A stretch of DNA of 64,000 nucleotides, from positions 4,402,001 to 4,466,000 of the forward strand of contig CATNEN010000001.1 of assembly GCA_950097015.1 (NCBI GenBank), written 5' to 3'. The notes beneath the pieces are model-generated. The model was not told where the DNA came from and did no database searches. It worked only from the letters and a program-made list of their open reading frames with translations. Position numbers and translations under genes: made by a program. Every line of letters starts with the position of its first letter. Position 1 is the stretch's first letter. The DNA comes from Macrostomum hystrix (taxonomy: Eukaryota > Animalia > Platyhelminthes). Shown here piece after piece: positions 779 through 62,800 of this stretch.

Positions 779-34655
<33,877 letters not shown>

Positions 34656-35313: not shown

Positions 35314-36962
35314 TTACAGGTGGATTTTTTAATTAGTTTGTGGCCTAATGAAACCTTCCGTTTGTTACGGATTGCATGCTAGCTTACTAAAGCATTTCTC
35401 GTGCTTTCATTCCTTCTGTGGAGCACTAAAACGCAGAATTAACTAATCCTAAAAAATCCAGTGAAAGTGTTCATAGCTCGTATATTTTATAAAAACAGAA
35501 ATATTTCATGGCTCGTTCTAAATTACAATTTTTTTCTTCGTTTCAGAATCAACATGGCTTGGCCTGAAGAGCCGCGTATACTGTTATTTGATCTGATATT
35601 TTAACCATGTTGCAAGCGATCAAGAAGACTAAATGTATTGATGTGTTGCCCATCGTAAAATATATTTGCATCTCATCTATAAGCGTTATTTTCTACCGTT
35701 TTCATGTCATCATTTGTGACAAGCTGTGTACGCTAAATGTTAAGCTGTCATGCATTTTGAAAATTTTCATTTAGGGTAAAAGCAGAACCGAAAACTGTCT
35801 TGTTCGTTTTAATCGGTGTTACTTAAGATTTGAGCTATTAAAAAAATTTCGTTAATTCCAGAAAATTTATTTTTCTTCGACGTTATAAAATGCTACTCAC
35901 TTCCTAGAGTGCTGTTGTTACACGAGTAAACGATATTCTATTTATTTTCAACACTAATTGCATGCGTTAAGCACTAAAATAGAAGCACCTGTTTTGCTTT
36001 TAATCTGGTCACAAGATTAACATTCTGTTCTGTTCTTACTTCATTTTCTGTCTTACATTTTCGATCCGGACAATTTTGCCTGAGATTTCATTCTAATACG
36101 AGCTATTGTGTCTTTTCAGCATTCCGTCGTGAATGTCTTTTGTTTTTTCTTGATTCTGACACAAAACATAATTGCTGGTTGTATGAAATTAAACGCTTCA
36201 GATGTCGTTACGAGTATTTACCACCAAATATTTGAGATTTCGAGAGCTGCAGCGTGGCAAAGAAAAGAGTAGATTAAAGAAGAGTAAATTAAGGCGGATA
36301 TTGCGAGGTTAAAAACGCCTCAAAGCCTCACAATTAGTACTTCCATAGGTTAAAACATTATACGATTTTGTTAATATAAAGACATACGACGCGTTTTCCT
36401 GTTTATTAAGTGTAAATCTACTTTCTCGCAATAATACACCATTGTGGTTAAACGTGGTTTTTTTATTTTGCGAACTACGCATGCTATTACACAATGAGTA
36501 CTGCTGAAATTATAAAAATTCAGATCGGTAAAAATTATGAAAAATTGCCTGCTTTTTATAATCAATTCGAGTCTTTGCATGTGAAACTGCCAGCGCTAAA
36601 GAACTGTTTACGTTACTATTTATGGTAAAAAATTTCACCTAATCTATACAGTGAGGCTGATGCTATTCTAACTCGTATATTATGTATCGTCGGAAATCGA
36701 AACTACAATAAACATTCTGAAAAGGCGTACAGTACATGTATGATTAACCTGCCAGATGTACTGCACATGCTGTACTCATTGTGCACTTACGCTGCCGTTT
36801 TTGTTTAAATACACACATAGAACAGCTTATTTCTATATTTTTGCTTTATTATTACGACATGAAACGCCTTTTACGAGTACATTTATGAGCTTTTATTTTA
36901 TTAGGATTACAAAGTTCAGGTAAACTCGTTCTCAGGTAGATATAGGTAAGCTTCGCAAATTA

Positions 36963-37310
36963 AGGGGGTGAGTGGCTAAGCGGTCTAATGCGTCTGCCTC
37001 TCGCACCAAGGTGCGATTCTGAGCTCGATTCTGCGGCGAGGTGACATTCATTTGATCGCAGCCGCGGAGAGAAGGCTTGGGCGTGAAATTTACGCCCTTG
37101 AGGGCCAACCTCCAAGGCACAGTGAAAGTGTACACTGCCTGACGATGAGAAAGTCAGGGGCAGATGTACACACCTGTGTGAGCGTATGCCTGCGTACGGT
37201 ATCTGTGTGTGTGTGTGTGCTCAGGAGTCAGCGAAATGGGCAGAATTGCCTACTCGCTGGCTGCGGGTCTAGTGTCACCAAATGATGTGCTCGCAGCCCT
37301 GCTGCAATTT
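36963..37310 (+). mobile_element. SINE family A, near full length
   Basis: High identity to 4623-4985. Confidence 0.9.
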
Positions 37311-37766
37311 TTAATGAGTACTATTAAGCATTTAATTAAAACGTTTCGCATCCGTGTTTCCAGCTATTCTATTTCGTCTACCAAATTTAAGTAAGCATGC
37401 AGGGACGAAACTCAAACTTATTTCCTGTTTTGTTAGCAATGCACAATGGGCTCAATTACGTCTTCTTCGCTCTAAGACCTGACGAGCTCGCATATAAGAT
37501 GGAAAGATAGGTAAGAGAAAGGTAAGGAAAGCTAACAAAAAACGGAGTCCAAGAAAACCCAAAAGTGGCTCACATATAACTTTTTCATTTTTATCAACAT
37601 CCCTGAGTCTATCTTGGAGCTGTCTTAGCTGCTAGCAACGAGGTTGTTGTAAAGGCGTGAACAGCTAGGTTTACATATATCAGCTGTATAAATTAGAAAA
37701 TGGCTAATCTCGTTCTTTATTGAGTGAAAGACAAGACTCGCGTGCCGAGCTATATCTACGCGAAGC

Positions 37767-40700
37767 ATGTCACGCTTAGAAACTGGCTGCTTTCAGCGGC
37801 TGCTGCTACTGCCGATTGTACTTCTAGCACTATTCGCATGGATTGCATGCAACGCAGGCTCGATTCCGGATGCTTCGTGGATTTCAGTGAGCTGCAACCA
37901 GAGCGAATGGGGCCCAGCGGTTTGCGTCTGCCAGAAGGCCAGTCGCAGCGAGACTCGGTGCCAACTGCAGCCCGGGACGCTGGTTCCACCTGGCTTGCTG
38001 TCCTGCATCTCAATAATGCCGAAAAAACTCAGCAGTTTAAGCATCGATTGCGGCCAGTACAGTGACTGCGCCACTGTGAGTTTGAGTCAGTTGGTTTACC
38101 GCTCGGAGCTGCTCCAGCTAGAATTGTCGCACTGTGGTCTTGATGCAGCTGATGAAGTTAATCCGCCAGGAGGCACCCAGTTTGCTTTAATAGCTGACGA
38201 AGCTATTGGCATCTCTGCCGGCTCGGCTGGGTTTCTGTCGAACTCACCTGTCGACAATCCATCAGCTAGGCGCGATGCTACTCACTATGGATGCTCCTTG
38301 CGGCGCTTAAAGATTGTAGAGGCCGATTTAAAATTTCCGACAGTTTTGGTTCAGAAATGTCCCAGTCTAAATAGCATCAACATTTCGAAATCGCGGCTCC
38401 GGGTAAGCCTTTTTCGGGGTTCGATTCCCGACTTTACTGGAACAATTTGTGCCCATTAGCAAGACACTTATCTCTGGATTGCTTCATTGCACCCAGCTGT
38501 TACATGGGTACCAGCATTAGCTGTGGTAAATGAGGATGGGTGTGGCTGCACAGCCGTCGCAGCCTTCAGATGCGCCACGCCATAGCTGCGGCTGTATCTT
38601 CGGCTGTACATCTGGCCGAAACGCCTCGGGGCAGGTGTAATCAATTGCTCGCTGGCATAGTCTTTAAGTTGTCTTTTTTTTGCTAATGATTTCTAAACCA
38701 CCATTCAACTCAGGATCTCACTGACTTAGATGTACTAGCCATCTCCTCTGCCGCAGAGGTCATTCTTTCTGGAGACGAACTGTTCTACTTCGGCGACAGT
38801 CTCGTAACCAAAGCCTTCGACGGGATGAATCAACAGCCTCTGGCTACGCAATGCGTAAGGAAGCGCTGCTCAAACTTTACCACCAAAGCCAAAGCTCTGA
38901 TCGAACAGATGGTGGTTAAAAATGGCGCAGTGACAGATGCCAGGAAGCTCTACTACATGATGGAGACAGAGAATATCGATTTCCGACTGATTTTAGGTCG
39001 CACAGAAGGCGAGCTGCACGTAGCAGGTCCACTTAGTACGCTGGACCTGTCAAATAACCGTCTATCCGTCATTCCAAGCTCCCTATCTATGATGAGCAAT
39101 CTCATACTGCTCAACCTGAGCAGGAACCGTATCGACAATATTTACCACGAGTCCGGCTGCTGGGGTGGGCCAGCCAGCGGCGTGCCGCTTCTGCCGGAGC
39201 AGAAGACAAAGCGTCAGTGCTACTGGTTCTGGGCGTCAAGGAAAACCCTGCACATTCTGGACCTGTCTCACAATTTCATATACTATCTCGGTCAAGTTGA
39301 GCCTTGGTATGAGGTAAGAAGACGCTCATTTCGATAAATGAAGGGCCGTTTGCTTCCCTCAATGTTCCTATTTTCAAACCCGTGGTTTTCTCTCTTTTTG
39401 GATGATTGGTATAGCGGGTAACACGGGCTGCCTCTCGCACAAAGGTCTTTGAGCTCGAATCCGCAGCGAGGCCACGTTAACTTGTGGCGCAGCCGCATGA
39501 CGAAGGCTTTGGGGGCTCAGTGTGCACCAACTGACAATTAAATTATTAGAATCCATTAAGTTTATTAGATGTCAATAAATTTCTTGCCTACACAACAATG
39601 ATAATTTCAGGTTGATCTGTGGATTTTACACCTGTCCTACAACCGCATTGCTGTGATGGGTGCGGATTCATTCACCGGAAGCTTGGCGTCTAATCTGCGG
39701 TATCTCTACATAAACAACAACTTTCTTCAAACTATCCAGCTTAACAGCTTGCGCCAGCTCAGCAAGCTCAATGCAAACAATAACAGACTAGCGTGCATTA
39801 AAAATGATACACTTCCTCATTCGGAAAATATGAGACTCATTGAGCTAGCAAATAATGAAATATCGTCGATATCACCATTCGTATTCAAGCAGTACAAGAT
39901 GCTTAAAATACTCGATCTCAGCAACAACAGATTGGAGTATATGCCCTACAGTAGCTTTGAGACCAGCCTGCGTCACGCTGCATCTGACAGGGTTGAACTG
40001 CTTATCGACAATCAAAAGGTGGTGCCAGTCTGCAATTGCAAGCATTTCTTTTTCTACGCCATGCAACAGGAGCAGAACGATGATAACTTGTTCACACTGC
40101 CAAGCTTGCAGAACAGATACGCGAAGACTTTGAAATGCAGGCTGATTCCAAAGTCAGCGAACGGGTCCAACATCACTAAGCATCTTGCCGCTATGAACTT
40201 AGAAGACTTCGGCTGCCAGCTTCACGACTACGGTAACATTGAGCTGCCGTTGTCGATTTGCAAGCGCAAAAGTGGTCACTGCATTGGACGCTGCAATCCT
40301 GGTTGCTACTGCTGGACTAATGCCATATCGACCATTATGAACTGCTCGGTGGAAGGAATGACACTGTCTGCTAAGAGCATTCCGATGCCCGTCACAGAGC
40401 TGGATTTCTCTTTTGTGACGACTAGCTATTTTCACGCTCTTCACAGAAACACACTCTCTTGGCTGATCGATGAGGACAGGCACGCCTTGAGGGTACTCCG
40501 CGCCACCCACAACAACATCGTCAGCATCAAAGACTATGCCTTCACAACAACGCCATTACTGAACAAACTGTTCCTTTCCCACAATTCAATAAAGACCCTT
40601 ACGAGTCAGACTTTCGCCGGCTTGGAGAGTACGCTGTGCCAATTGGAACTGGATCACAATAGTCTGTCGTCTATCAGTGTCAGCCAGGTGCTTGAGCCGC

Positions 40701-41830
40701 TACAGTCTCTGGCTAAGGTTACTCTGCTTGGGAATCCCTTCGAGTGCAGTTGCTCAGGTGTGCACCTCAGCTACATGAAGAGCATGGCCGATTATTATAA
40801 AATCAAAAGTGTCATTCAAGACTACAGACAACTTACCTGTAATCTGACTAGCTCATTTGTGAAAGACTTCAACTACTACAACCTATCTTCTACCTACAGC
40901 AACATTTCCCTGACCAGATTTCCCCTGCAAAGTGTTTCACTTCTAGAGGCCGTTTGCGATGAAATTAGTGACCTAAAGTCTCAGCTCAAGGTGAAAATTC
41001 TCCATACTTCGCTAATTACGCTTGGCATTGCGGCGGGCCTTATAGCTCTGGGATTTCTGATGCGTCGGCGCCATTTTATCATAAGCATAATCACATTCAG
41101 CCTTCTTATCCACGTCATGAGACCCAGGCGTTGTCGAAACGTCAAGCTTTATCACGCATTTTTCTATTTCGACAATGAGAACGACTCTGAGGCTGCGGAA
41201 GATATTCTGAAGCACATAATTAATCCACCTGTAGAATTCCCGAACAGCAAAGAGATCAAAGTGTGCACCTGTGCGGAATTAGCCACATCTTATGACAATG
41301 AGGGCCCAGTGCAGCGGACTGATTTTGAATCAATCGAAACTGGAGTGGCCGAAAGCTTCAAAGTGTTGCTACTACTGTCGACGGGACTTATTCAAAAGAA
41401 AGGCAAAGAGATAGCAGGTATCATGAACTTACTAGGTCATAGAGGCATGGCCCAAGATTTGATTCTGATTACAGTGGATAAAAAGGACGAGCTGGAACTT
41501 CAATTGTCGCGAGTTCAGGAAACCATTCGGTCGGCACAGGAGCGCAAAGGTATGGAGGCGTTATTGTGGCTCGCGGCTAGACGCCAAATCATTCGCTACG
41601 GCAGTCAGGACTGGCAGTATCGTCTCATGACCAGCATAATGGGCGACTTTCCGCAAGTTTCTTCTCATCGCCAGAATGTCTTTCCCACTCCCAGTGAAAG
41701 AGATCTTCCGCTTTCAACGGAGTCGAGCTCCGGAGCTCAGCAAATGACTGAGCACTCTCACCTATTGGGTTCAACCAGAACGCCACTAACAACGCGAGAG
41801 TTTTACGATGATGACGTTGGAAGCTGTTGA
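37767..41830 (+). CDS. Leucine-rich-repeat transmembrane receptor, Toll-like (multi-cysteine-cluster) architecture with divergent TIR-like domain, about 1151 aa
   Basis: Exons 37767-38402, 38714-39313 and 39611-41830, all phase 0 GT-AG. Signal peptide (LLLLPIVLLALFAWIACNA), many LxxLxLxxN repeats, internal Cys clusters (VCNCKH; CNPGCYC...NCS), LRRCT GNPFECSC, TM at about 41009-41061, then LYHAFFYF...IKVCT...SFKVLLLLS...LILI...DWQYRL, which resembles TIR boxes. Confidence 0.85.
38414..38645 (+). mobile_element. SINE family B, 5'-truncated, in intron 1 of the LRR gene
   Basis: ggggttcgattcccgact...agcaagacactta...gggtaccagcattagctg...caggtgtaatcaatt. Confidence 0.85.
39400..39540 (+). mobile_element. 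SINE family A fragment in intron 2 of the LRR gene
   Basis: tgcctctcgcacaaaggtc..gagctcgaatccgcagcgaggccac. Confidence 0.75.
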
Positions 41831-42616
41831 ACACTTTTCTCGACCAATATGACCTAGATTAAAAAATCTTCTAGACTGACAAGAACAACTATTTCGTATG
41901 GAATATGAAATTTCGGTTCTGGGCCCGCTGATCTGGCTGTACTTCTCTCTATCTCTAATGCACCTGCTTTGGTGCTCGAATTCGTTATTTGGTAATATCT
42001 TTTTTCATACCCACTGTCGTTTGGTGACAGCTACCATTATTGAGAAATGAAGACTACACAATTGTATATTTTCACAACGTTTTTACCATGCCTTTTAGTT
42101 CTATTAGCTTTATAATATTCTATCAAATCATTATATTCTTTCGCCCTCTACACATAGCATCTATCACTATATCCCTGAGACTACGAGCTCGTATTAACAT
42201 TTAACAATATATATTTCATATTTTGTTTTATTCCTGGCGTCCCTTGTGTTTTTACTGCTCTTATTTTTACTACCATTGCTTTTGCTTTTCCCTTGCCAGC
42301 TCGATAATTGAATCCTACAAAACTTCGCTTTTTATGTTATGTTTTCGTTGTCCATTAAAATATTTGTTGTCAAAAAATATATATAAACGAAAAAAATATA
42401 CAAATGCACCTCTCGTCTTGGCAATTACCATAGACCATTCAGCGTGATAAACGAAATTTTAAGCCACGAAATGTATGGACGTATATACGAAAAAATCTTA
42501 GCTAGAAAAAGTCGATACGAGCTACGAGTATTTTTAATCATGACAGACATCTCTTAAGTCCTGCAAAACCATATCATGCCTGTGTTAAACCAAGACTGCT
42601 TGACTAGCTCTGAACA

Positions 42617-43770
42617 ATGACTGCTCATTCGATGGGCTCTCATGGACCAAATACTCTGAATTCAATACCGTGCATGAAACTAAATGTCGACAAAGTTTCC
42701 GTACAAACTTTAAGGCATCGACTGACAGCCTTACAAAATTTGATAGACTCCAAACTTGCGGGAAAAAACAAATGGAACATTTTCGGAGCACCGCCGTGTA
42801 AGGCCATTCGCGAGCTGTACTGGGTCTTTAGACCAGGTGATCCATTTTTACCTGGAGACAGGCTCGGTCTGTTAATCTGGGAGCACAATGTGATGAAGTG
42901 TACACGAAAACTCCTGGACGAGCACGAGAAGCGTCAGCAGGCGCAGCCACATCGGCTGCTTAATCGGTACGCATCGAAATGAATAGATTTTCGCGATGCA
43001 AACGTTAATAGTAATAATAATTGCAGGAGAGCTGTGGGCGATGGCACATCATTTTGGTGACACTAGACCCGCAGCCAGCGAGGAGGCAATTCTGCCCATT
43101 CCGCTGACTCCTGAGCACACACGCAGACAGGGGTGCACATCTGCCCTGACTACCTTTCTCATCGTCAGGCAGTGCACATTCTCACTGTACCTTGAAGGTT
43201 GACCCTCAAGAGCGTAAATTGTACAAGAAGCCTTATCTTCGTGGCGGCGCCCCAAATGAATGTGACCTCGCCGTGGAGTCGAGCTCAGGGACCTTGGTGC
43301 GAGTGGCAAACTTGTTAACCGCTCTGAGACTCAGCCCCGATGCGAACGTTAACGGCGTTTTTAACAGTATATATATTATATATTGGCATTTTTATTTTAG
43401 ATGTATTTTTTCTTCGCAATTTAACAGATCGCGATCGGTGGGCAACGACAAGCCTAACACTTATCGGCCCAATCAGCATCAGATAAATATTTTTCCACGC
43501 TCATCCAAGCTATCGAACAAAGAGAACCCCGCAGTAGCGAAAGCTTCGAGCGATAACAAAAATTTCGAAAATGATGAATACTACCTGCCCAGCAGTGAGG
43601 TGCCAGACGCTCGTATAATTAAACAAAAGCGAAATCGTCATCTCACCCCGGACCAGCAGCAGATTAACAAACGGTTGAGTACTGTCAATGGATTGAGACG
43701 ACGTCTCGACAATAGTCGATTCCGTACTGTCTGCCCTCGCTTGCTCTGTCACTCAGCTGCAGATCACTAG
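42617..43770 (+). CDS. Hypothetical protein of about 230 aa (2 exons)
   Basis: Exons 42617-42966 and 43428-43770 join in phase 2 (CG|gtacgc ... aacag|A); the intron contains a SINE. No recognisable domain. Confidence 0.5.
43005..43338 (-). mobile_element. SINE family A
   Basis: Reverse complement of family A, inside the orphan gene intron. Confidence 0.88.
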
Positions 43771-51300: not shown

Positions 51301-54300
51301 TTAACCTAGGCTAAATTGTCTAAATGTCAAAGTAGTTTTTTCAGGGCTTAAAAGGTTATTGAATTAATAAAGGTAATTATCAGCAGGGCAGCAGCGCCAC
51401 TAGAGCTACTCTTTCCACTTTTTTAGAGTTGTCACTTTATGTCATTAGTTTGTAAGACTTGTGTTGTTAGTTATTCAGTGGTGTGATTGAGGCGCGAATA
51501 TGCGATTTCTGAGGGCAGGCTCGAATTATCGTCAAACAGAGGCGCGATTTTTCAATTTTCGAATTTTCATTTTTTACTGATCACGTTTAGTCTATTTGCG
51601 CACGCTTTATTCAAATTTAAACTTAATGTAATGTTATGGTGTAAAATACATGCAAATCTAATTATTTTTCAGCTTTTTTAGTTGCGCAGGCCAAACTTTT
51701 GAGTGGTAATTGGTAAAGTTCTGCCACAGCAAGGATTGAACCTTAGTGCTGGAAAAAGAAGCAAAAACCATAAAAATATAGGTTTTCAGAAATTAATTTT
51801 TCGTTTTCAATAATTTCATTTAATCATTTTCCACTTGGTTTTACTCTAGACAAGTTGGCAGTTGCAAAGGCATGTTATTATTGGTTTTTTAATAATAAAA
51901 ACATAATTAAGCCCTTCTTTAACACGCGATTTTTCAAAAGTAGAAAGTACCGATGCCGAAGAACCGGAAGTTACTTTTATTTTCGAGTGCCGGTACCGGA
52001 ACTACTACCGGAAGTTACTTTCTTTAGAACCGGAAGTTACTTGACCGGAAGTTACTTTTTTAAAGTAACTTGCCCAACACTGCCTGGCTGATTCAGACAT
52101 GAACATCTGAAATTTAGACATTTGTTTAACTATTGTCGGATGGCTTAAAATTAACAGACTTAAGAGTAAATAATTTGTAAAAACGAATAGTAAAAAATTC
52201 TAATCTGAGTTCGTGGAAACCATAAAATTTTTCCATTTTTGTTAACTTAACAGTAGAACTACCAAGGGGGGAATTCCCCCCCCCTTGACAATTCTTTTTG
52301 CTGCACCCGAACGGAACAATGCAAGCACACAAAACTCAAGAACACGGGACTTTTTGTTGCGCATCTTCTGAAACAAGAAACAAGTCGCCAGCTCTTCAGA
52401 CCGTCGAGATATTCAATGTTTCTGGCCGAAGGTCCGATTTTTCCCATAAGAGCTAGTTTATTTCATACAGCCCTATACACGAATTTGCACTGCGCCTCAG
52501 TGCGGCCTTTCCAGACCTTCAAACTTTATCAGCACGTCACCCGAATGTTCCTGCATCATCCCCAATGTCGAGGCTTGATCAGTGAAAGTAGAGAAATTCG
52601 CTTTAGGGACTCCATGGTCGGCTGGTGCCACTTGTTGAAGGTCCAGCAGCTCCGTCTAGATAAAGGTCGGTGACCGCCGAAGTCGGAGATGATGCAGGCA
52701 CATTCGGGTGACAAGTTGATCAATTTTGAAGGCCTGGCAAGGCCGTACTAAGGCGCAGTGCGAATTCGTGTATAGGGGTGTATGAAATAAACTAGCTCTT
52801 ATGGGAAAAATCGGACCTTCGGCCAGAAACATTGAATATCTCGACGGTCTGAAGAGCTGGCGACTTGTTTCTTGTTTCAGAAGATGCGCAACAAAAAGTT
52901 GGCCCGTGTTCTTGAGTTTCGTGTGCTTGCATTGTTCCGTTCGGGTGCAGCAAAAAATTGTTAAGGGGGGGAATTTCCCCCCCATGGGTATAAAAAACGT
53001 GCGGCAAAATGGCTTGGTAGTCCTACTGTTAAAGACACTGACCTATTTTTAATCTGGAATTGAAAAAATGCAATTTCCCGTGACAATATTTCTAGGAAAC
53101 GTTCCTTCCCTTGGCGAGAAGAAATCGATTTCTGTTGGCTGATAAGATAATCGTCAAATCGGCAGTTACATGCAAGGTTCGTGACGGTTGTAGAGCGCTA
53201 CGGGATATCTGCGGCTAGTTTCTATGATATTTTATTCACAAATTATTTTTTAAATACCAAGTCGACTTTATAAAAGCAACGTATACCCCTTTTTTACAAG
53301 CGGTCGTTTCAATCTCAGATTTTAATCTGTCGGATTAATTGGCTGCTGGCTTCTAGTGTACATTTGTATACCTGCCTCACAAACTGTACCTTTCTATCCG
53401 TCTACCCCATACTCACCCTTAAGTCCTATCGAGTTTTGCTTTTACATCTAACTTACTCTACCTTTGAGTCTACCTCTCATTTAAATTCTACCGCTCAATC
53501 TTAGGTCTACCTCTCAATCTACATTTCAGGTCTACCTCTCGATCTACCTTTGAGTCTACCTCTCAATCTACCTTTGAGTCAACCTCTCAATCTACCTTTA
53601 AGTCTACCTCTCAATCTACGTTTAAGTCTACCGCTCAATCTTAGGTCTACCTCTCAATCTACATTTCAGGTCTACCTCTCGATCTACCTTTGAGTCTACC
53701 TCTCAATCTACCTTTGAGTCTACCTCTCAATCTACCTTTAAGTCTACCTCTCAATCTACGTTTAAGTCTACCGCTCAATCTACGTTTAAGTCTACCGCTC
53801 AATCTTAGGTCTACCTCTCAATCTACATTTTAGGTCTACCTCTCAATCTACATTTTAGGTCTACCTCTCAATCTACATTTTAGGTCTACCTCTCAATCTA
53901 CATTTTAGGTCTACCTCTCAATCTACCTTTGAGTCTAACTCTCAATCTAGTAGTAGACTCAAAGGTATTGAGAAGTAATGATTGAGAAGGATTAAGTCTA
54001 AGTCTAAGTCTTAGTCTACCTCTTACATCTACCTCTTAAGTCTACCTCTCAATCTACCTTTAAGTCTACCTCTCAATCTACCTTTAAGTCTACCTCTCAA
54101 TCTACCTTTAAGTCTACCTCTCAATCTACCTTTAAGTCTACTCTCTTTCTCCCTACACTACCGGTTAATCCAGAAAGTTAAAAATCTGCTTTGCCAAGGA
54201 AGAGTGTTACATCTGAGAAACAGGCAATTATTCAACGTGTAACAACTCAGTCAAGCCAACAGTTTTTTATCTTGTACCAAAATATCCTGACTAGAAAATG

Positions 54301-56025
54301 TGACTTGACTAGCAATTAGACGTTGAAAACATGAGCGTTCATTGCGCAGCAGTCAGAAAGTCTTCAATCTTGTCTACGGCATGTTAATTAGTAGCTATGG
54401 TTTTCTGCTTGTATTTCAGAAGGCACATTATGCAGATTCCTGCAGTCTCAATTCATTAAGAGCTTGCAACAAGCATTGCTTACTGTCTGCTTTGGCAGAA
54501 TTTGAATCATGTATTTTAATTAAAATATTAGTTTTCCTATCAGGCTGACAATCCCATGAGAAATCTGTTAAGTTTAATAAAAATTAATCTTCATCGTTAA
54601 TAGAAGTCAGCTTCAGCAGTGTTTCTTGTTTTAGCAGTTTTAACTGTTATCCTACAGATCTTGAGATCATTTGAGAATATGTGAGATGATTTGAGAGTAT
54701 GTGAGATGATTTGAGAGAATGTGAGATGATTTGAGAGAATGTGAGATGATTTGAGAGTATGTGAGATGATTTGAGAGAATGTGAGATGATTTGAGAGAAT
54801 GTGAGATGATTTGAGAGTATGTGAGATGATTTGAGAGTATGTGAGATTATTTGAGAGAATGTGAGATGATTTGAGAGAATGTGAGATGATTTGAGAGAAT
54901 GTGAGATGATTTGAGAGAATGTGAGATGATTTGAGAGAATGTGAGATGATTTGAGAGTATGTGAGATGATTTGAGAGTATGTGAGATGATTTGAGAGTAT
55001 GTGAGATGATTTGAGAGTATGTGAGATGATTTGAGAGAATGTGAGATGATTTGAGAGAATGTGAGATGATTTGAGAGAATGTGAGATGATTTGAGAGTAT
55101 GTGAAATGATTTGAGAGAATGTGAGATGATTTGAGAGTATGTGAGATGATTTGAGAGAATGTGAGATGATTTGAGAGTATGTGAGATGATTTGAGAGTAT
55201 GTGAGATGATTTGAGAGTATGTGAGATGATTTGAGAGTATGTGAGATGATTTGAGAGTATGTGAGATGATTTGAGAGTATGTGAGATGATTTGAGAGTAT
55301 GTGAGATGATTTGAGAGAATGTGAGATGAGTAGGAGTTTTAGAAAATGATTCTCACCTCGAAGCCGAACCAGGTGAGGTTGAGTTGTGTTATGTCGTAAG
55401 TCCAGGAACCGAACTCCAGATAGCACACTTGGGTGTCGAACGGAAAGTATTGAATTTCCACCGGGCAGGTGCTTTTAAACAGACTCTGCGGAATCCACAG
55501 GACGGTGCCATCTGAGTAAACCACCACCCGCGCCATGCGCTTCTCCAGGAGTCTCTCGTCGGCGAAATTGTGCAATCGAATGTCCGGAGTCCAAACCTCG
55601 TAGGGAAACAGTCGTACCTGAGTGATGTTCTCAAACTCGCCATCGGCAAGCCAGGACTCCCAGTTGAGTAGAGGATCTTTCCAGGTGTACCTCAGCCAAC
55701 AATTGGTGCGCAGCATTTGACGATTCTCGTCTAGATCAAGGATCTGGATGATCGCCAGACCGAATTCTATCGTGATCTGGTCTGTGCTGTTGATCACTGG
55801 CCTGCCCAGCAATCCGAAATCCTGGTAACGATGCACCAAGCGTTGAATTAGGGTCTTCTCGCGAGACTTGTTTGCCGCGGCCCTGAAACTGCTCAATCTT
55901 TGATAATCATGGTGATGATCTTGCAGGTGCTGCTGCTGCTGTTGCTGCTGCTGTTCCGAGTTGCTAACTAGTAAGCCGAATAGCAGAAACGATTGCCAAG
56001 TTGCGTACAATAGTGTGCTAATCAT
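48296..56025 (-). CDS. Cys-loop ligand-gated ion channel, nicotinic acetylcholine receptor-like non-alpha subunit with anion-type pore (ACC-like), about 583 aa
   Basis: Exons 56025-55357 and 49378-48296, phase 0. Signal peptide, GRPV, WTPDI, Cys-loop CPVEIQYFPFDTQVC, FGSWTYD, M1-M4, M2 LPPESPAKTQLGMNIFVAFF, EWRAMAIVLDR. No vicinal CC in loop C. Confidence 0.95.
50792..52082. mobile_element. Non-autonomous DNA transposon, hAT-like (about 1.3 kb)
   Basis: 13-bp TIR CAGTGTTGGGCAA / TTGCCCAACACTG with clustered subterminal CCGGAAGTTACT and CCGGCAC repeats at both ends; no clean 8-bp TSD. Confidence 0.75.
52251..53028. mobile_element. Foldback MITE with arms of about 320 bp and TTAA target duplication (piggyBac-like)
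   Basis: TTAA|CAGTAGAACTACCAA ... TTGGTAGTCCTACTG|TTAA; arms at about 52251-52570 and 52678-53028 are long inverted copies. Confidence 0.88.
53455..54140. repeat. Minisatellite with a unit of about 24 bp (AGTCTACCTCTCAATCTACCTTTA)
   Basis: Degenerate tandem array with a short inverted segment near 53950-53990. Confidence 0.92.
54661..55329. repeat. 20-bp minisatellite (GTGAGATGATTTGAGAGWAT), about 33 copies
   Basis: Direct inspection; lies in the Cys-loop gene intron about 27 nt from the donor. Confidence 0.97.
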
Positions 56026-56396
56026 TTTCTTATCAATAGGCGCCTAATATATAATGTATTGGTTCCTGCAGAATCCAGTTGATATACTGCTGGGTTCTCA
56101 TAATCATCTTCTTCGATAAAAAAGTTCTCTTATCATGCTCGAATTGAGTCTTATGATATTGCCCCTCGGGTTGACTAAATAGGGTTGGTAAATAATGTTT
56201 TTCTGCAGCGAGAACAAATCTGACAATTCTCCTCTAATAGCCCAAGTCGATGCTGTAGGGCCATACATGTATGCGTGAGCCTCATCGACCAATCAGCTGA
56301 ACTAAGCCGATAATGCTAGGCCTCCCTTTTAATCTCTCCTCCTATTGGATTGAGTTTCAGGGCTTTCTAAAATACTTGTATTTCTTGTTAGAGAAC

Positions 56397-57420
56397 AGTG
56401 ATTGGATGGGTGAGTGATTGGATGGGTGAGTGAGTGGGTGAGTGAGTAAGTGAGTGAGTGAGTTAGTGGGTGAGTGAGTGAGTGAGTGAGTGAGTGGGTG
56501 AGTGAGTGAGTGTGTGAGTGAGTGAGTGAGTGAGTGAGTGAGTAAGTGAGTGTGTGAGTGAGTGAGTGGGTGAGTGAGTGAGTGAGTGAGTGAGTGAGTG
56601 AGTAAGTGAGTGTGTGAGTGAGTGAGTGGGTGAGTGAGTGAGTGAGTGAGTGAGTGAGTGAGTGAGTGAGTGAGTGAGTAAGTGAGTGAGTGAGTGGGTG
56701 AGTGAGTGAGTGAGTGAGTGAGTGAGTGAGTGAGTGAGTGAGTGAGTGGGTGAGTGAGTAAGTGAGTGAGTGAGTGAGTGAGTGGGTGAGTGAGTGAGTG
56801 AGTGAGTGAGTGAGTGAGTGAGTGAGTGAGTGAGTGAGTGGGTGAGTGAGTAAGTGAGTGAGTGAGTGAGTGAGTGGGTGAGTGAGTAAGTGAGTGAGTG
56901 AGTGAGTGAGTGAGTGAGTGAGTAAGTGAGTGAGTGAGTGAGTGAGTGAGTGAGTGGGTGAGTGAGTAAGTGAGTGAGTGAGTGAGTGAGTGAGTGAGTG
57001 AGTGAGTGAGTGAGTGAGTGAGTGAGTGAGTGGGTGAGTGAGTGAGTGAGTGAGTGAGTGAGTGAGTGAGTGAGTGAGTGGGTGAGTGAGTGAGTGGGTG
57101 AGTGAGTGAGTGAGTGAGTGAGTGAGTGAGTGAGTGAGTGAGTGAGTGAGTGAGTGTGTGAGTGAGTGAGTGAGTGAGTGGGTGAGTGAATTAGTGAGTA
57201 AGTGAGTGAGTGAGTAAGTGAGTGAGTAAGTGAGTGTGTGAGTGAGTGAGTGAGTGAGTGAGTGAGTGAGTGAGTGAGTGAGTGAGTGGGTGAGTGAGTG
57301 AGTGTGTGAGTGAGTGAGTGAGTGAGTGAGTGAGTGAGTGAGTGAGTGGGTGAGTGACTAAGTGACAGATGAATTGAGCGAGTGACAGATAAAGTTAGTT
57401 AAAGATGAAGTAAGTGAGTG
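56397..57420. repeat. (GAGT)n microsatellite, about 1 kb, imperfect
   Basis: Direct inspection. Confidence 0.97.
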
Positions 57421-58317
57421 ACAGATGAATCCAGCGAGTGACAGATGACGTGTAAGACTCGGAGAGGCAAGAAATGATAAGTACTTTTAGAAATCTAGTT
57501 TTACTCTTAATCTGCAACAATAATCAAACACTTGCTTATCTGCTGTGGTCGAGTCGACAAATTAATAAGGCATCTAAATGCAAAATAGCAGACGTTCATA
57601 CTGAGTTTTAATGACCTGTCATTTCAATCAAGCATTTATAGCTATAGGATAGGATTTTTAACAGACTTGTTGTCACGTTCACTAATCATTTATTTAGCAA
57701 GACAGATTGCGTTTGCATAAATTTGTAATCAGTTTGGAGATGTTTTAAGCTTGGGTCCGATGTTATTTAATCCATATAAAAGCACATGCGTCTGACAATC
57801 GCTACTTAAAGTAGACGTTTGAAGAAAACTAAGTAGGAAATTGAGAAAAACAAATTAGTAAAATCGACTTTTACAGAAAAAAGTAGCATTATACTAAATA
57901 AAACACAGGAAATGCTTTGCTTACTCAAGAAATGTAACTACTTGGCTATTTGAACTGAGAAGCTTAGGAAAATTAGCAAAAACAACTATTTAATTGTTTA
58001 ACAAACTTACGTTAGAATTCACAAGACAAGCAAATAAACAAAAACTTGCCTTATTTAAACCGCCTCTTCATTGACACAGTCACAAATGATGTAACTTGAA
58101 AAAGTAAAAATTTGGAATGTAGAGTGATGTTTAATATTTTTATTGTTGTTAAGCGGGCAATGATCAAACATAGAAATTATGTACAAACTCAAATAATATC
58201 AATTGTAGTTATTTATTTATTTACATTTTGCATTACAGGGTTTTAATTATGTTTGTGCGTACGTACTAAAAGCTCTGTGTAATGTGGGAATCACCTCACT
58301 TCGGGAATGTTCAGACA

Positions 58318-59342
58318 TGGGAGAGATGAGACACGGGAGAGATGAGACACGGGAGAGATGAGACACGGGAGAGATGAGACACGGGAGAGATGAGACACGG
58401 GAGAGATGAGACACGGGAGAGATGAGACACGGGAGAGATGAGACACGGGAGAGATGAGACACGGGAGAGATGAGACACGGGAGAGATGAGACACGGGAGA
58501 GATGAGACACGGGAGAGATGAGACACGGGAGAGATGAGACACGGGAGAGATGAGACACGGGAGAGATGAGACACGGGAGAGATGAGACACGGGAGAGATG
58601 AGACACGGGAGAAATGAGACACGGGAGAGATGAGACACGGGAGAGATGAGACACGGGAGAGATGAGACACGGGAGAGATGAGACACGGGAGAGATGAGAC
58701 ACGGGAGAGATGAGACACGGGAGAGATGAGACACGGGAGAGATCAGACACGGGAGAAATGAGACACGGGAGAGATGAGACACGGGAGAGATCAGACACGG
58801 GAGAGATGAGATACGGGAGAAATGAGACACGGGAGAGATGAGACACAGGAGAGATCAGACACGGGAGAGATGAGATACGGGAGAGTTGAGACACGGGAGA
58901 GATCAGACACGGGAGAGATCAGACACGGGAGAGATCAGACACGGGAGAGATGAGACACGGGAGAGATCAGACACGGGAGAGATCAGACACGGGAGAGATG
59001 AGACACGGGAGAGATCAGACACGGGAGAGATGAGACACGGGAGAGATCAGACACGGGAGAGATGAGACACGGGAGAGATCAGACACGGGAGAGTTGAGAC
59101 ACGGGAGAGTTAAGACACGGGAGAAATGAGACACGGGAGAGATGAGATACGGGAGAAATGAGACACGGGAGAGATCAGACACGGGAGAAATGAGACACGG
59201 GAGAGATCAGACACGGGAGAAATGAGACACGGGAGAGATGAGACACGGGAGAGATGAGATACGGGAGAAATGAGACACGGGAGAGATGAGACACGGGAGA
59301 GATGAGACACGGGAGAGATAAGACACGGGAGAGTTGAGACAG
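58318..59342. repeat. 16-bp minisatellite (GAGAGATGAGACACGG), about 64 copies
   Basis: Direct inspection. Confidence 0.97.
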
Positions 59343-59881
59343 GAACTCCGCTGTCCCTACCTAGCAGAGCCTTTGTTCTAAACTACTATAGATCAGCAAG
59401 TTGCACACAAAGTGTTGGGAAATCATATATACATATTCTTTACCTGGCCAAAACATGAAAAAGTTAAAATGGCTTGAGATTGCAAGAATGCGTGTTGCAG
59501 TAAACAGTGATTGGAAATATAGCAGCAGCGATTTAGATTTCGATTTGTAAAAGAACAGGACGTCTTTTTAAGAGTAAGAATGGCCGGTCGTTTGAATAAT
59601 ATTAGACAACAAAAACCATAGTTACTTGCGAACTAAACTACTAACACAAATTGGCGTGTTAGTAGGCACGATCATATATGAACTATTTAGCAATATAATC
59701 TTCATGTAACATATGCTCGTATGGAGTTCACAACTATTGAATGATCTGCAGAAAGGATCAATATGCGACTGGATTTAAAGGGTTTTGAGGTTGCCACCAC
59801 GGATTTTTAAAGGTCTGGGGTTGCTCATGAATCATAAGCGAACAAATAATAACAAATAGCTAAAGACTTATCAATTTACAT

Positions 59882-62800
59882 TCAGTCGGCTGCATGCAGT
59901 TGACCGCCGTGACCTTCAGCCTCGACAGCCCCTCCGTGAGCCGTATCTCTGAGCAGAGAATTCGCTTCTCTAAGCAGAGTGTCGGCCTTCCTAAGCATCA
60001 TGCGGCTTAGCTCTAGTCGAGTCGCTCCGGAGTAGTCCGAGCCGACCTCTTCTTCCTCATCTTCATGACCGGCTGGTACGAATGGCGTTGACTCTTCTGG
60101 CACGGCGGGAATCGAATTGGCGGACAGATTCACCTGCTGCTGCTGCTGCTGCTTGACCCCTGCGCCACGAAGTGAACTTCTTGAATGAGAATTCCTGCCA
60201 GACAGCAGCTGACCGTAGGGACTGGACGGTCGGGAGCTGTGTCGCGACGATGGCGCCGGTACGTCGTCGTAGAGAATTCGCGACATGGAATCCGAGACGC
60301 CCTGTTGGTGATGATTATGGTCGAGTCGAGATTGAGCAACCATCGAGCGGTTAGAAAAAATGTACATTTGAGTGCAGCCCGTATTAGGGCCGTTTTAATT
60401 GAGTCCTTATTAGGGCCGTTTTAATTGAGCCCGTAAAAGGGCCGTTTAATTAGAGCCCTTATTACTGCCCTTCTAACATATCTATTTTAGGGCAGTTTAA
60501 CATATAGCCCGTATTAGGGGCAGTTTTAACATTTGTTTAACCTTTTCGGCAGTTTTTCATAGGCCTTATCTGTTTTTGTTTGGCCAGTTTTAAACACCTT
60601 TTTTGCCCTTATTTACCGTTTTAAAAAAACACTTTTTCAGAAAAACAAAGATTTGTTGATCTTGCCTGCAAATAGTAGAGGCTGGCCTGAGTCTGTCCCA
60701 CCGGCGGCAGCGTTCGAGATCTGTGCATGCCAGGCGCATCTATGTAGGTGGTCTCCATGGTGCGGACTGACGATCTCTGTGGCTGATGCCGTGTCATTCT
60801 AGGCACCACTTCTTCGTAAGTATCCTCCCCTGGCGTTCCGGATCGGAGATTAGCTGCGGGTTCCTTCTCAACCACCTGGACGGTGCTGACGCAGAGACAG
60901 TGGGCTAGGCAGCCAGGCGGTTCACGTTTTCGTCGACGAAGAGCTGCATGATTGAGTAGGGTAGAGTTGAGTAGGGTTAGAGTTGAGTTGTATTTGGGTT
61001 GATTTTTACCCTGTATCTAATCTCTCCCGTGTCACGTCTGGACTGTATCTAATCTCTCCCGTGTCACGTCTGGACTGTATCTAATCTCTCCCGTGTCACG
61101 TCTAGACTGTATCTAATCTCTGGCGTGTCACGTCTAGACGGCATCTAATCTCTCGCGTGTCACGTCTACCCTGTATCTAATCTCTCGCGTGTCACGTCTA
61201 GACTGTATCTAATCTCTCGCGTGTCACGTCTAGACTGTATCTAATCTCTCCCGTGTCACGTCTAGACTGTATCTAATCTCTCGCGTGTCTCATTTACCCT
61301 GCGTCTAATCTCTCGCGTGTCACGTCTACCCTGTATCTAATCTTAGGGTTTCAGTTGAGTAAGTTTTAGAGTTGAGCAGTATTTGAGTTCATTAGGGTTT
61401 GGTTTGGCTAGGCTTTGGACGCGTCGCTCATCGTGCGTCGCGTCGTAGCCACATCTGGACAGCCTAACTCAAACGAAGAAAAGATTCACTTTAGTAATCT
61501 CACAATGACCTGACGTGGCCTCGTCAGAATATAGCAGAACGATACACAACAGACGGAAACAGCAAATAAAGGATAGAGAGACTATACAGAGAACAGGGAA
61601 AGTGAATAAATGAACTGCATGCACTAACTGCCTCTGCTGCGAGGAGGAACTAAGCTCTTCTTCTAAAAGCGATTGCAATAAGCTGCTGCTGCTAGTCAGT
61701 GACGTAATCACACTACAGCAAGCCATTGTGTAGTAGTATTATAAATTGCCTAATTTGCAATACTGACTCCGTCATGGCGCGTTCATTCGCGCATAATTTA
61801 TGCCTATAAGATTAAGGCCCCTTTTGTAATTCATTCAAGCATTACATCAGCCTAGTTTCCAATTCTAATTTGTTAAGCCGAATAACACTGATAAAAACGA
61901 TGAGTAAGTGTAGCGAGTGGCTCTACTCTAAGTTTATGGTTCAGATCATTTTTAATTATGAAGTCTTCCTTAAAAAAAGAATACGATTTCTTAAAAAAAC
62001 GATACAAAAATGACCAATGCGATTTAAAGACGAACGAAAGGTACTTCAATAATGTGAATTGTAGCCAAAATTTAGTTTTTACAGTAAAATTTCGAAAAAA
62101 TAGTTCTTTTCCTCTTACTTTTTTGTCTTTTTGTATTCAAATCTCGGATAGATGGCGATGACAAAAGACAAACATGTTTTAGGTTTTAGGTCTTGGTATT
62201 GTTGATTTGTGTGACGTGTGTGTATAAATAAATTACAATGTGTTGATTATGGGTTTAGGTTGAGTAGGGTTTGGGTTGAGAAGGATTTTGGTTGAGTAGT
62301 GTTTAGGTTGATTTGGGTTTGGGTTGAGTAGGGTTTGGGTTGAGTAGGGTTTGGGTTGAGTAGTGTTTAGGTTGATTTGGGTTTGGGTTGAGTAGGGTTT
62401 GGGTTGAGTAGGGTTTAGGTTGAGTAGGGTTTGAGTAGGGTTTGGGTTGAGTAAGGTTTGGGTTGAGTAGGGTTTGGGTTGATTTGGGTTTGGGTTTAGT
62501 CGAGTTTGGGTTGAGTCGGGTTGAGAATTGTTTGTGTTCAGTAGGGTTTGTCTTGAGTAGGCTTTGGGCTTAAGTAGGTTTTAGGCTGAGTAGATTTTTT
62601 GTTGAGTAGGGTTTCAGATAAGTAGGATTTGGTTTGAGTAAGGTTTTGGTTTGAGATAGTTTATAGTAAGGTGAGTTTAGGTTGGGCTTTTTGGAGAGAA
62701 TAGGGTAGGATTTTTGTTCGATTTTAAGCATAAACTGTGCAGTTCTTAAAAATATTTCGTACGACAATAAGGTAAAACAGGATAGTTAAGGAGGCCATGA

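What the first reader, a model, noticed from the sequence alone, without database searches (positions are those of the whole stretch)
37767..41830. Toll-like receptor architecture with a cryptic, highly diverged TIR domain in a probable flatworm
Seen: signal peptide, LRR block, LRRCT (VCNCKH, about 40030), LRRNT (CNPGCYC, about 40292), about 4 more LRRs, LRRCT (GNPFECSC, about 40733), TM, then a domain of about 165 aa (about 41147-41643). Established: two LRR blocks split by a cysteine cluster pair is the protostome-type (mcc) Toll layout. Inference: the tail keeps TIR landmarks in order. LYHAFFYF resembles box 1 YDAFISY, IKVCT resembles YKLCL, IETGVAESFKVLLLLS resembles I..AI..SRR.I.VLS, LILI resembles the betaD strand, and WQYRL resembles box 3 FW.KL. 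The BB-loop RDxxPG and the WC before the conserved Glu are lost (KKGKE). Canonical TLRs have been reported absent from Platyhelminthes. If the host is a flatworm, this could be a TLR missed because its TIR falls below profile thresholds, possibly signalling without MyD88-type BB-loop contacts.
Basis: partly seen in the sequence, partly recalled or inferred. Interest (0 to 1): 0.82.

Follow-up and report, generated by a model that had tools for sequence, protein, structure and literature searches.

The report
Diverged Toll-like receptor in Macrostomum flatworm
An intact three-exon gene of a Macrostomum flatworm encodes a receptor built like an insect Toll receptor, but its inner signalling domain has drifted so far that standard domain tests miss it, in a phylum that published surveys say has no such receptors.

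Summary
Window 37767-41830 (+) is an intact three-exon gene (37767-38402, 38714-39313, 39611-41830). I analysed the exons separately and never joined them. Their ends abut exactly on two M. lignano proteins. The genome matches the published M. hystrix assembly: about 220 Mb in 42 contigs.

- **Ectodomain:** it is colinear with an insect Toll through LRRCT, LRRNT, LRRs and LRRCT.
- **Tail, negative results:** the 178-aa tail hits no Pfam TIR and no PDB chain. A profile search of 1.84 billion proteins found only three Macrostomum relatives.
- **Tail, positive results:** the six-sequence family profile matches canonical TIRs at 94-95% hhalign probability, and 0 of 200 column shuffles reached the real score. 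A language-model look-up of the orthologue's tail lands on TIR clusters. UniRef already names the orthologue 'TIR domain-containing protein'.
- **Limits:** the window sequence alone is not significant (35% and 1%). The fold is untested because structure prediction was off.

The same genome has Pfam-positive TLRs and a Death-TIR protein. The scan had already noted other TLR-like genes on other DNA of this genome.

The parts
37767..38402 (+). Exon 1 (212 codons): start codon, hydrophobic signal-peptide-like N-terminus, cysteine-rich region with 2 irregular LRR cores
   Evidence: ORF and GT donor at 38403. Maps to P0026 residues 26-226 at 47% identity. Hydropathy and LRR cores. No Pfam hit.
38403..38713 (+). 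Intron 1 (GT...AG, phase 0)
   Evidence: Sequence read. The junction SRLR|DLT is matched by the M. lignano model P0026.
38714..39313 (+). Exon 2 (200 codons): LRRs
   Evidence: Pfam LRR_8 33.8 bits on the ORF 38825-39334, which overlaps this exon. 62% identity to P0026 residues 227-426. 3 LRR cores.
39314..39610 (+). Intron 2 (GT...AG, phase 0)
   Evidence: The junction PWYE|VDL is matched by PWYQ|VNL in P0001 and P0026.
39611..41830 (+). Exon 3 (739 codons plus stop): LRRs, LRRCT, LRRNT, LRRs, LRRCT, TM, TIR-like tail, unconserved C-terminus
   Evidence: Pfam LRR_8 71.4 bits. 52% identity to P0001 over 682 aa.
40022..40219 (+). First LRRCT-like cysteine cluster (CxC...C...C)
   Evidence: Cysteines at 141, 143, 176 and 202 of the exon 3 product. 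VPVCNC aligns with NPFLCNC of insect Toll P0004. No Pfam LRRCT hit.
40256..40345 (+). LRRNT-like cysteine cluster
   Evidence: Cysteines at 217, 224, 228, 232, 234 and 245. CNPGCYC...MNCS aligns with CPVNCLC...VDCS of P0004.
40730..40966 (+). Membrane-proximal LRRCT-like cluster
   Evidence: GNPFECSC aligns with GNPWSCEC of P0004 and with GNPWDCGC of PDB 7wrq. Cysteines at 379, 381, 410 and 449.
40997..41062 (+). Transmembrane segment, followed by RRRH and a second, shorter hydrophobic juxtamembrane stretch (41075-41119)
   Evidence: The only Kyte-Doolittle 19-residue windows above 1.8 in the exon 3 product start at aa 463-467. Sequence.
41120..41653 (+). 178-aa TIR-like cytoplasmic domain, with no RDxxPG BB-loop motif at the aligned position
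   Evidence: 49% identity to M. lignano over 178 aligned columns. hhalign of the family profile against TIRs gives 88-95% probability, with a shuffle control. Atlas look-up of the orthologue's tail lands on TIR clusters. No Pfam or PDB hit.
41654..41830 (+). 58-aa C-terminal tail not conserved with M. lignano, then the stop codon
   Evidence: There is no true alignment to P0026: 20% identity to an unrelated part. The tblastn HSP ends at 41653.

Best explanation
**What it is (my estimate about 0.85).** This is an intact three-exon gene of a Macrostomum flatworm, most likely M. hystrix. It encodes a type I membrane receptor of about 1151 codons with the protostome-type (multiple cysteine cluster) Toll layout: signal peptide, about 10 LRRs, LRRCT, LRRNT, 4 LRRs, LRRCT, one TM helix and a 178-aa cytoplasmic domain. 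That domain descends from a TIR domain but has diverged beyond Pfam's reach and has no RDxxPG BB-loop motif at the aligned position. The gene belongs to a clade seen only in Macrostomum (window gene/P0001; L010/P0028; L011, L012/P0027; L013).

**How it most likely works (inferred, about 0.45).** A ligand brings two ectodomains together. The paired TIR-like tails then form a platform that recruits a TIR adaptor. One gene in the same genome encodes Death and TIR in a single ORF. Because the BB-loop stretch is the least conserved part between the two species, the contact would have to use other surfaces. Candidates are the well-conserved betaC, betaD-alphaD and betaE-alphaE (DWQY) stretches.

**Shown:** gene structure, orthology, ectodomain layout, family-level homology of the tail to TIR, and conservation of the tail. 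**Inferred:** the fold, membrane topology, expression, ligand, adaptor and output.
For: - **Gene model.**. The exon products abut exactly on P0026, and tblastn gives three strong HSPs.
- **Species.** M. lignano orthologues PAA94200.1 and PAA63714.1. The assembly size and contig count equal those in the abstract of PMC10468722.
- **Ectodomain.** Pfam LRR hits. The alignment with insect Toll P0004 is colinear through both cysteine-cluster regions, pairwise E 2e-13.
- **Tail, profile comparisons.** hhalign of the family profile against 7 own-genome Pfam-positive TIRs gave 88.1% (137 columns) and 90.6%. Against 18 canonical TIRs it gave 95.1%, E 3.5e-8, and against 11 non-flatworm TLR TIRs 94.0%, E 1.4e-7. 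In 200 column shuffles, 0 reached the real score (maximum 22.4 against 44.5), and the reversed profile gave 0.7%.
- **Tail, other signals.** In the Atlas feature search of P0001 residues 700-875, the three best clusters are all TIR (0.90, 0.89, 0.87), and 10 of the 10 best named hits share that family or clan. UniRef names P0001, P0027 and P0028 'TIR domain-containing protein'.
- **Constraint.** The tail is 49% identical to M. lignano, while the last 58 aa are unalignable. Paralogue tails L011 and L012 give dN/dS 0.116 over 173 codons.
- **Adaptor candidate.** Death and TIR_2 lie in one 515-aa ORF.
Against: - No Pfam TIR or TIR_2 hit on the window tail at E<=1, on paralogues L010-L012 at E<=5, or on the M. 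lignano relatives at E<=10.
- No PDB chain matched by phmmer (0 at E<=10). With the family profile, 9 weak hits appeared and none is a TIR.
- The HMMER profile search of 1.84 billion representatives gave 4 hits at E<=0.001: three Macrostomum proteins and one repetitive fish mucin with 0 matched stretches. No canonical TIR was found.
- The window sequence alone scores only 35.4% and 1.1% hhalign probability. Window plus orthologue scores 62.7% and 21.2%.
- In the strongest runs only the N-terminal half (76-77 columns) is aligned.
- The Atlas score is a lead only. It shares 162 features, below the 170 typical of true family members. Shuffled proteins reach 0.9 in 4-10 of 100 cases, and none of this was measured for parts of proteins.
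- The TIR tree places the family on a 2.05-substitution stem, and its position is unresolved with long-branch attraction flagged.
- The BB-loop motif, which I recall canonical TLR signalling uses, is absent.
Confidence: 0.7

Rival explanations
1. The tail is TIR-derived but no longer signals. The protein acts as a decoy, a co-receptor for the more canonical Toll receptors of the same genome, or a developmental adhesion or guidance receptor whose output does not use TIR-TIR recruitment.
For: - There is no RDxxPG at the BB-loop position, and that stretch is the least conserved part of the tail between the two species, including a 5-residue indel.
- The same genome has LRR-TM-TIR genes whose TIR passes Pfam and which could do the canonical job.
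- The ectodomain's non-Macrostomum matches include Slit and chaoptin as well as Tolls.
Against: - The tail as a whole is as conserved as the ectodomain (49% against 47-62%).
- Paralogue tails are under strong purifying selection (dN/dS 0.116). Some function of the tail is therefore kept.
- Box 1-like, betaC and box 3-like (DW.Y) stretches are kept across the six sequences of the family alignment.
Confidence: 0.3
2. The tail is not related to TIR at all. The protein would be an LRR-only 'TLR-like' receptor with a novel Macrostomum-specific cytoplasmic domain, and the TIR resemblance would be convergent alternation of beta-strand and alpha-helix patterns.
For: - There are no Pfam, PDB or big-library links to any TIR.
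- The window sequence alone is not significant by hhalign.
- The tree placement is unresolved.
Against: - The family profile matches two independent TIR sets at 94-95% probability, with 0 of 200 shuffles reaching the score.
- The register matches box 1, betaB, betaC, betaD and box 3 in order over 137 columns.
- The Atlas look-up lands on TIR clusters.
- UniRef names three relatives as TIR-containing.
- The domain sits where a TIR sits in a Toll-type architecture.
Confidence: 0.1
3. The locus is a pseudogene or a mis-assembled set of ORFs and makes no protein.
For: No expression data could be obtained. Exon 1 has no Pfam hit.
Against: - Three open exons of 212, 200 and 739 codons have canonical splice sites and phase 0.
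- They are colinear with the M. lignano gene models, with exact abutment.
- Identity across species is 47-62% in every exon.
Confidence: 0.03
4. The tail is an enzymatic (NAD-cleaving, SARM1-like) TIR rather than a scaffold.
For: In one alignment the Glu of KKGKE falls on the conserved Glu after the WC position of canonical TIRs. That Glu is also present in the M. lignano orthologue.
Against: - The Glu is not kept in the paralogues L011, L012 and P0027.
- Other hhalign runs do not place it consistently.
- No NADase TIR was among any hits.
- Nothing else was tested.
Confidence: 0.03

Closest known systems
M. lignano hypothetical proteins BOX15_Mlig030947g1/g2 (PAA94200.1, 914 aa; PAA63714.1, 1144 aa, partial; UniRef A0A267H7C3 'TIR domain-containing protein')
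   Same: These are the orthologues. They share the same exon junctions, 47-62% identity exon by exon, and the same tail at 49% identity.
   Different: They come from another species. The g1 model lacks exon 1. The BB-loop stretch differs and has a 5-residue indel. My searches found no paper that discusses them.
Insect P-type (multiple cysteine cluster) Toll receptors, here P0004/P0003 (Parthenolecanium corni 'TIR domain-containing protein', about 1290 aa, Pfam LRR plus TIR)
   Same: They have the same order of parts: LRRs, LRRCT, LRRNT, LRRs, LRRCT, TM and a cytoplasmic domain. The colinear alignment covers about 420 aa.
   Different: Identity is only 23%. Their TIR passes Pfam and carries an RDF-type BB-loop motif (sequences). 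The window tail fails Pfam and lacks that motif.
Pfam-positive Toll-like receptors of the same genome (L002 at G000:C1:26819545, L005 at C29:2727844, L004 at C38:8428677)
   Same: They share the host genome and the LRR / LRRCT-like / TM / TIR order.
   Different: Their TIRs score 23-25 bits, over the 21.3 cut-off, and keep HDRAxxPG. They are not detectably similar to the window's exon 3 at E<=1e-3. In the TIR tree they form a separate clade (99/99).
'LRR-only TLR-like' proteins in the sense of Orus-Alcalde et al. 2021 (PMC8609888)
   Same: A survey that first filters on a TIR HMM, as that paper describes (passages read), would probably not retain this protein as TIR-bearing. The TIR models tried here fail on it; that paper's own profile was not run.
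   Different: The protein has a conserved 178-aa cytoplasmic domain that is homologous to TIR at profile-profile level.

Membership tests
Toll-like receptor (criteria of PMC8609888: TIR + TM + at least one LRR) | At least one LRR domain | tested here: met
   Pfam LRR_8 scores 71.4 bits on the exon 3 ORF and 33.8 bits on the ORF overlapping exon 2, against a cut-off of 27.
Toll-like receptor (criteria of PMC8609888: TIR + TM + at least one LRR) | Single transmembrane helix between ectodomain and TIR | tested here: met
   One hydrophobic stretch, at aa 463-484 of the exon 3 product, exceeds Kyte-Doolittle 1.8 over 19 residues. This is crude hydropathy; no dedicated TM predictor was available.
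Toll-like receptor (criteria of PMC8609888: TIR + TM + at least one LRR) | TIR domain recognised by a profile HMM (Pfam PF01582 / PF13676 over the cut-off) | tested here: not met
   There were 0 families for the tail at E<=1. No TIR family was found for paralogue ORFs L010-L012 at E<=5 or for P0001, P0026, P0027 and P0028 at E<=10. The tail is not among the 7 PF01582 or 38 PF13676 genome matches.
Toll-like receptor (criteria of PMC8609888: TIR + TM + at least one LRR) | Homology of the cytoplasmic domain to TIR by profile-profile comparison | tested here: met
   The family profile scores 95.1% against 18 TIRs and 94.0% against 11 non-flatworm TIRs. 0 of 200 shuffles reach the real score. For the window sequence alone the result is inconclusive (35.4% and 1.1%).
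Toll-like receptor (criteria of PMC8609888: TIR + TM + at least one LRR) | Flavodoxin-like TIR fold | not testable with these tools
The Atlas holds no model of the orthologue.
Toll-like receptor (criteria of PMC8609888: TIR + TM + at least one LRR) | Box 2 / BB-loop motif RDxxPG (recalled as the canonical signalling motif) | tested here: not met
   In the hhalign alignments the position is CTCAELATSYDNEGPVQ, which has no RD..PG. The own-genome and insect TIRs aligned there have HDRAxxPG or HYRDF.
P-type / multiple-cysteine-cluster TLR | More than one LRRCT, with an LRRNT between the LRR blocks (definition read in PMC8609888) | tested here: met
   All three clusters align with those of insect Toll P0004. 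Caveat: the Pfam LRRCT and LRRNT models did not hit.
MyD88-dependent Toll pathway | A Death+TIR adaptor in the same genome | tested here: inconclusive
   Death (39.4 bits) and TIR_2 (74.5 bits) lie in one 515-aa ORF at G000:C38:30080434-30081027. Orthology to MyD88 and any interaction were not tested.
NAD-cleaving (SARM1-like) TIR | Catalytic Glu in the conserved position | tested here: inconclusive
   The Glu of KKGKE aligns with the conserved Glu but not consistently. It is absent from the paralogues.

The most novel reading that the evidence does not exclude
Macrostomum keeps a private clade of Toll-type receptors whose TIR domain has given up the BB loop. These receptors would signal, or regulate the canonical Tolls of the same animal, through a different surface. 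The candidate surface is the betaD-alphaD stretch, which is strongly conserved between the orthologues, together with the DWQY box 3. If so, Toll receptors were present in the flatworm ancestor and were lost only later in the planarian and parasite lineages that the published surveys found empty. There would also be a mode of TIR assembly not described for TLRs.
Probability: 0.2. Interest if true: 0.7.

Novelty: new variant of a known kind. Interest (0 to 1): 0.5.

Why it matters
Published surveys state that Platyhelminthes have no Toll-like receptors, and the M. lignano genome is listed with 0. I read this in passages of PMC8609888 and in the review PMC7958881.

This gene shows one way such surveys can miss receptors. 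The architecture is complete, but the TIR is below HMM thresholds. Together with the Pfam-positive TLRs in the same genome, it suggests that the early-branching flatworm genus Macrostomum retains Toll-type receptors. 'Loss in flatworms' would then be a loss inside the phylum rather than at its base.

The gene also offers a natural experiment on what a TLR tail can do without the BB loop.

Three things limit the weight of this particular gene:
- It is one of several such genes in the genome.
- Its orthologue already carries an automatic TIR label in UniRef.
- Neither the fold nor expression could be tested here.

Tried and rejected
- **Word search on the tail.** 1623 candidates were found and none scored E<=0.01. 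This was a false negative of the word index, because later found P0001, whose tail is 49% identical.
- **PDB search with alignment A1.** The profile kept 519 positions, including the LRR columns of full-length P0001, so it returned only LRR proteins. I discarded it and repeated the search with the tail-only alignment A4 (9 weak hits, none a TIR).
- **Nucleoside 2-deoxyribosyltransferase chains.** Four of these 9 hits, at E 0.85-1.8, are too weak to use.
- **P0029.** This Amia mucin-4 has 0 matched stretches and is a tandem repeat. I treated it as spurious and left it out of all alignments.
- **TIR tree (24 rows, none dropped, 146 of 221 columns kept).** It shows only that the tail family is one clade (100/99). 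Its position relative to other TIRs is unresolved and long-branch attraction was flagged, so no origin is claimed.
- **Second TIR-like domain.** Paralogues P0028 and L012 seem to carry one, but tblastn of the P0028 C-terminus against the window gave no hit at E<=1.
- **Rfam on 36500-43000.** 0 matches.
- **Literature.** Four searches found no open paper describing a Macrostomum Toll-like receptor. The 'Toll' hits in PMC12732829 and PMC6109357 are author names in reference lists. PMC12849515 has nothing on true flatworms. The additional files and the 'data not shown' of PMC8609888 may list TLR-like proteins of M. lignano that I could not see.
- **Not joined.** The three exon products were never joined into one protein. 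Every search, alignment and script used them exon by exon.

Full report
**Gene model.** The region holds three open stretches on the + strand. Reading the DNA and translating the pieces separately gives three exons: 37767-38402 (212 codons), 38714-39313 (200 codons) and 39611-41830 (739 codons plus stop). Both introns have GT/AG and phase 0. I never joined the exons; every search, alignment and script used them one by one. Two M. lignano proteins support the model: P0001 (PAA94200.1, 914 aa) and P0026 (PAA63714.1, 1144 aa, partial). The three exon products align to P0026 at residues 26-226, 227-426 and 427-1102, abutting exactly at both junctions, with 47%, 62% and 49-53% identity. tblastn of P0026 against the whole window gives three strong HSPs (37869-38402, 38711-39316, 39605-41653) and one weak one at E 0.80.

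**Organism.** The window's genome has 220,453,370 bases in 42 contigs. The abstract of Wiberg et al. 2023 (PMC10468722, outline and abstract read) gives about 220 Mb in 42 contigs for Macrostomum hystrix. The closest proteins in a 5.8-billion-protein collection are from M. lignano at 52% identity. The host is therefore a Macrostomum flatworm, most likely M. hystrix.

**Ectodomain.**
- Pfam finds LRR_8, LRR_4 and LRR_1 on the ORF overlapping exon 2 and on the exon 3 ORF, and nothing in exon 1.
- The cysteines form CxC...C...C (aa 141, 143, 176, 202 of the exon 3 product), then a six-cysteine cluster (217-245), then CxC...C...C (379, 381, 410, 449).
- A pairwise alignment with an insect Toll-type protein (P0004, Pfam LRR plus TIR) is colinear through all three clusters. 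VPVCNC pairs with NPFLCNC, CNPGCYC...MNCS with CPVNCLC...VDCS, and GNPFECSC with GNPWSCEC; E is 2e-13.
- This is the P-type / multiple-cysteine-cluster layout as defined in PMC8609888 (passage read).
- The Pfam LRRCT and LRRNT models did not hit.
- Outside Macrostomum, the best long matches are Toll-type proteins, Slit and chaoptin at similar scores. The ectodomain alone does not prove 'Toll'.

**Tail, negative results.**
- The residues encoded by 41120-41827 hit no Pfam family at E<=1 and no PDB chain at E<=10.
- The ORFs of paralogues L010, L011 and L012 (E<=5) and the M. lignano proteins P0001, P0026, P0027 and P0028 (E<=10) have no TIR hit either.
- The tail is not among the 7 PF01582 or the 38 PF13676 matches in the genome.
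- A HMMER profile of four tails (A3) was searched against 1.84 billion representatives. It found 4 proteins at E<=0.001: P0001, P0027 and P0028, all M. lignano, and a repetitive fish mucin with 0 matched stretches. No canonical TIR protein appeared.
- The same profile type against PDB gave 9 weak hits, none a TIR.

**Tail, positive results.**
- The tail has paralogues in the same genome: L011 and L012, and L010 with the tail split by an intron.
- hhalign of the tail family against the seven own-genome stretches that pass Pfam TIR gave 88.1% probability, E 3.1e-6, over 137 colinear columns. With six tails it gave 90.6%.
- In that alignment KLYHAFFYF falls on box 1, IKVCT on betaB, VAESFKVLLLLS on betaC, DLILITV on betaD, and IIRYGSQDWQYRL on betaE and box 3.
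- Controls: 200 column shuffles of the tail alignment gave mean score 11.6, sd 2.2 and maximum 22.4, against the real 44.5. So 0 of 200 reached it. The reversed alignment gave 0.7%.
- Against TIRs from non-flatworm TLRs only, the probability was 82.5% with 4 templates and 94.0%, E 1.4e-7, with 11 templates. Against all 18 canonical TIRs it was 95.1%, E 3.5e-8.
- The signal is a family signal. The window tail alone gives 35.4% and 1.1%, window plus orthologue 62.7% and 21.2%, the L011 group 17.5% and 73.1%, and P0028 alone 67.8% and 18.9%.
- The ESM Atlas could not read the window sequence. For residues 700-875 of the stored orthologue P0001, its three nearest clusters are all TIR families (0.90, 0.89, 0.87), and 10 of the 10 best named hits share that family or clan. 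The tool itself rates this as a lead: 162 shared features, and not calibrated for parts of proteins.
- UniRef names P0001, P0027 and P0028 'TIR domain-containing protein', and names two fragments of the P0028 cluster 'Protein toll'. From my own knowledge, such names come from an automatic PROSITE-type domain rule. I could not run that profile here.

**Divergence and constraint.**
- No RDxxPG lies at the BB-loop position. That stretch is the least conserved part between the two species and has a 5-residue indel.
- FFYFD, KVLxLLST, DLILIT, QERKGME and IRYGSxDWQY are kept.
- The tail domain is 49% identical to M. lignano, and the following 58 residues are unalignable. This sets the domain's end near 41653.
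- The paralogue tails L011 and L012 differ at 36 of 173 residues, with dN/dS 0.116.
- In a tree of 24 TIR or TIR-like stretches, the six tails form one clade (100/99) on a stem of 2.05 substitutions per site, and the window groups with P0001 (96/90). The clade's position among TIRs is unresolved and long-branch attraction was flagged.

**Context in the genome.**
- The genome is not devoid of canonical parts. The open frames at L002 and L005 carry LRR_8 plus a TIR above Pfam's cut-off (25.3 and 23.2 bits against 21.3). The L004 frame carries the TIR, an LRRCT-like motif and a hydrophobic stretch.
- All three show an LRRCT-like cluster, a hydrophobic stretch and an HDRAxxPG motif.
- The relatives of L002 are Tollo-like TLRs of other phyla. 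No M. lignano protein was among its 7 hits at E<=1e-8.
- A 515-aa ORF carries Death followed by TIR_2, which is a MyD88-like architecture. Five tandem copies of a Death plus two-TIR_2 unit lie at C38:17955229-17996330.

**Literature.**
- Orus-Alcalde et al. 2021 (PMC8609888; passages and section 5 read) list M. lignano with 0 TLRs and conclude that TLRs are absent from Platyhelminthes.
- Their method first filters on a TIR HMM, then on an LRR HMM, then checks with SMART. They add that TLR-like proteins were present 'data not shown'.
- The review PMC7958881 (passages read) says the same for planarians, citing Peiris 2014, Gerdol 2017 and Tsoumtsa 2018. I did not read those three.
- Four searches found no open paper that describes a Macrostomum TLR. 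Supplements were closed.

**What could not be done.**
I have no transcript evidence and no M. lignano DNA for a codon-level test of the window gene itself.

**Verdict.** This is a diverged, Macrostomum-specific member of the Toll-type receptors with a TIR-derived tail that lacks the BB-loop motif. It is one of several TLR-like genes in this genome. Other agents of this scan reported such genes on other DNA, and the Pfam-positive ones make the stronger case against 'no TLRs in flatworms'. I rate the identity at about 0.85. The proposed signalling mechanism (dimerisation, then adaptor recruitment through a non-BB-loop surface) I rate at about 0.45, with a non-signalling decoy or co-receptor role as the main rival.

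Noticed in passing
L002 76-2313 (+) = G000:C1 near 26819545; L005 814-3099 (-) = G000:C29 near 2727844; L004 952-2361 (+) = G000:C38 near 8428677: These are long open frames. L002 and L005 have LRR_8 plus a TIR over Pfam's cut-off. L004 has the TIR, an LRRCT-like motif and a hydrophobic stretch. All three keep HDRAxxPG. These are more canonical Toll-like receptors in the same flatworm genome. L002's relatives are Tollo-like TLRs of other phyla, and no M. lignano protein was among its 7 hits.
   Followed up: partly
L015 636-2183 (-) = G000:C38:30080434-30081027: A 515-aa ORF carries a Death domain directly followed by a TIR_2 domain, which is a MyD88-like architecture. Orthology to MyD88 was not tested.
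   Followed up: partly
G000:C38:17955229-17996330: Five tandem copies of a unit with one Death match and two TIR_2 matches lie on the minus strand, spaced about 7.7-13 kb apart.
   Followed up: no
L012 about 3655-4386 (+); P0028 residues about 1130-1357: Paralogues of the window gene carry a long C-terminal extension after the TIR-like domain. Earlier scan notes read it as a second TIR-like domain. The window gene and its M. lignano orthologue lack it.
   Followed up: partly
window 41075-41119: A second, 15-residue hydrophobic stretch lies four residues (RRRH) after the TM helix. Comparable stretches follow the TM in the paralogues (RRRH/KRHK then a hydrophobic run). It may be an amphipathic juxtamembrane helix.
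   Followed up: no
L003 736-1932 (+) = G000:C7 near 12713212: A TIR-bearing open frame is preceded in the same frame by a run of tandem PELQLTE heptads.
   Followed up: no
window 54001-60000: Base skews are strong: GC skew is 0.235, 0.596 and 0.327 in three successive 2-kb bins, and AT skew is 0.331 at 58001-60000. This suggests a strand-biased repeat or satellite.
   Followed up: no
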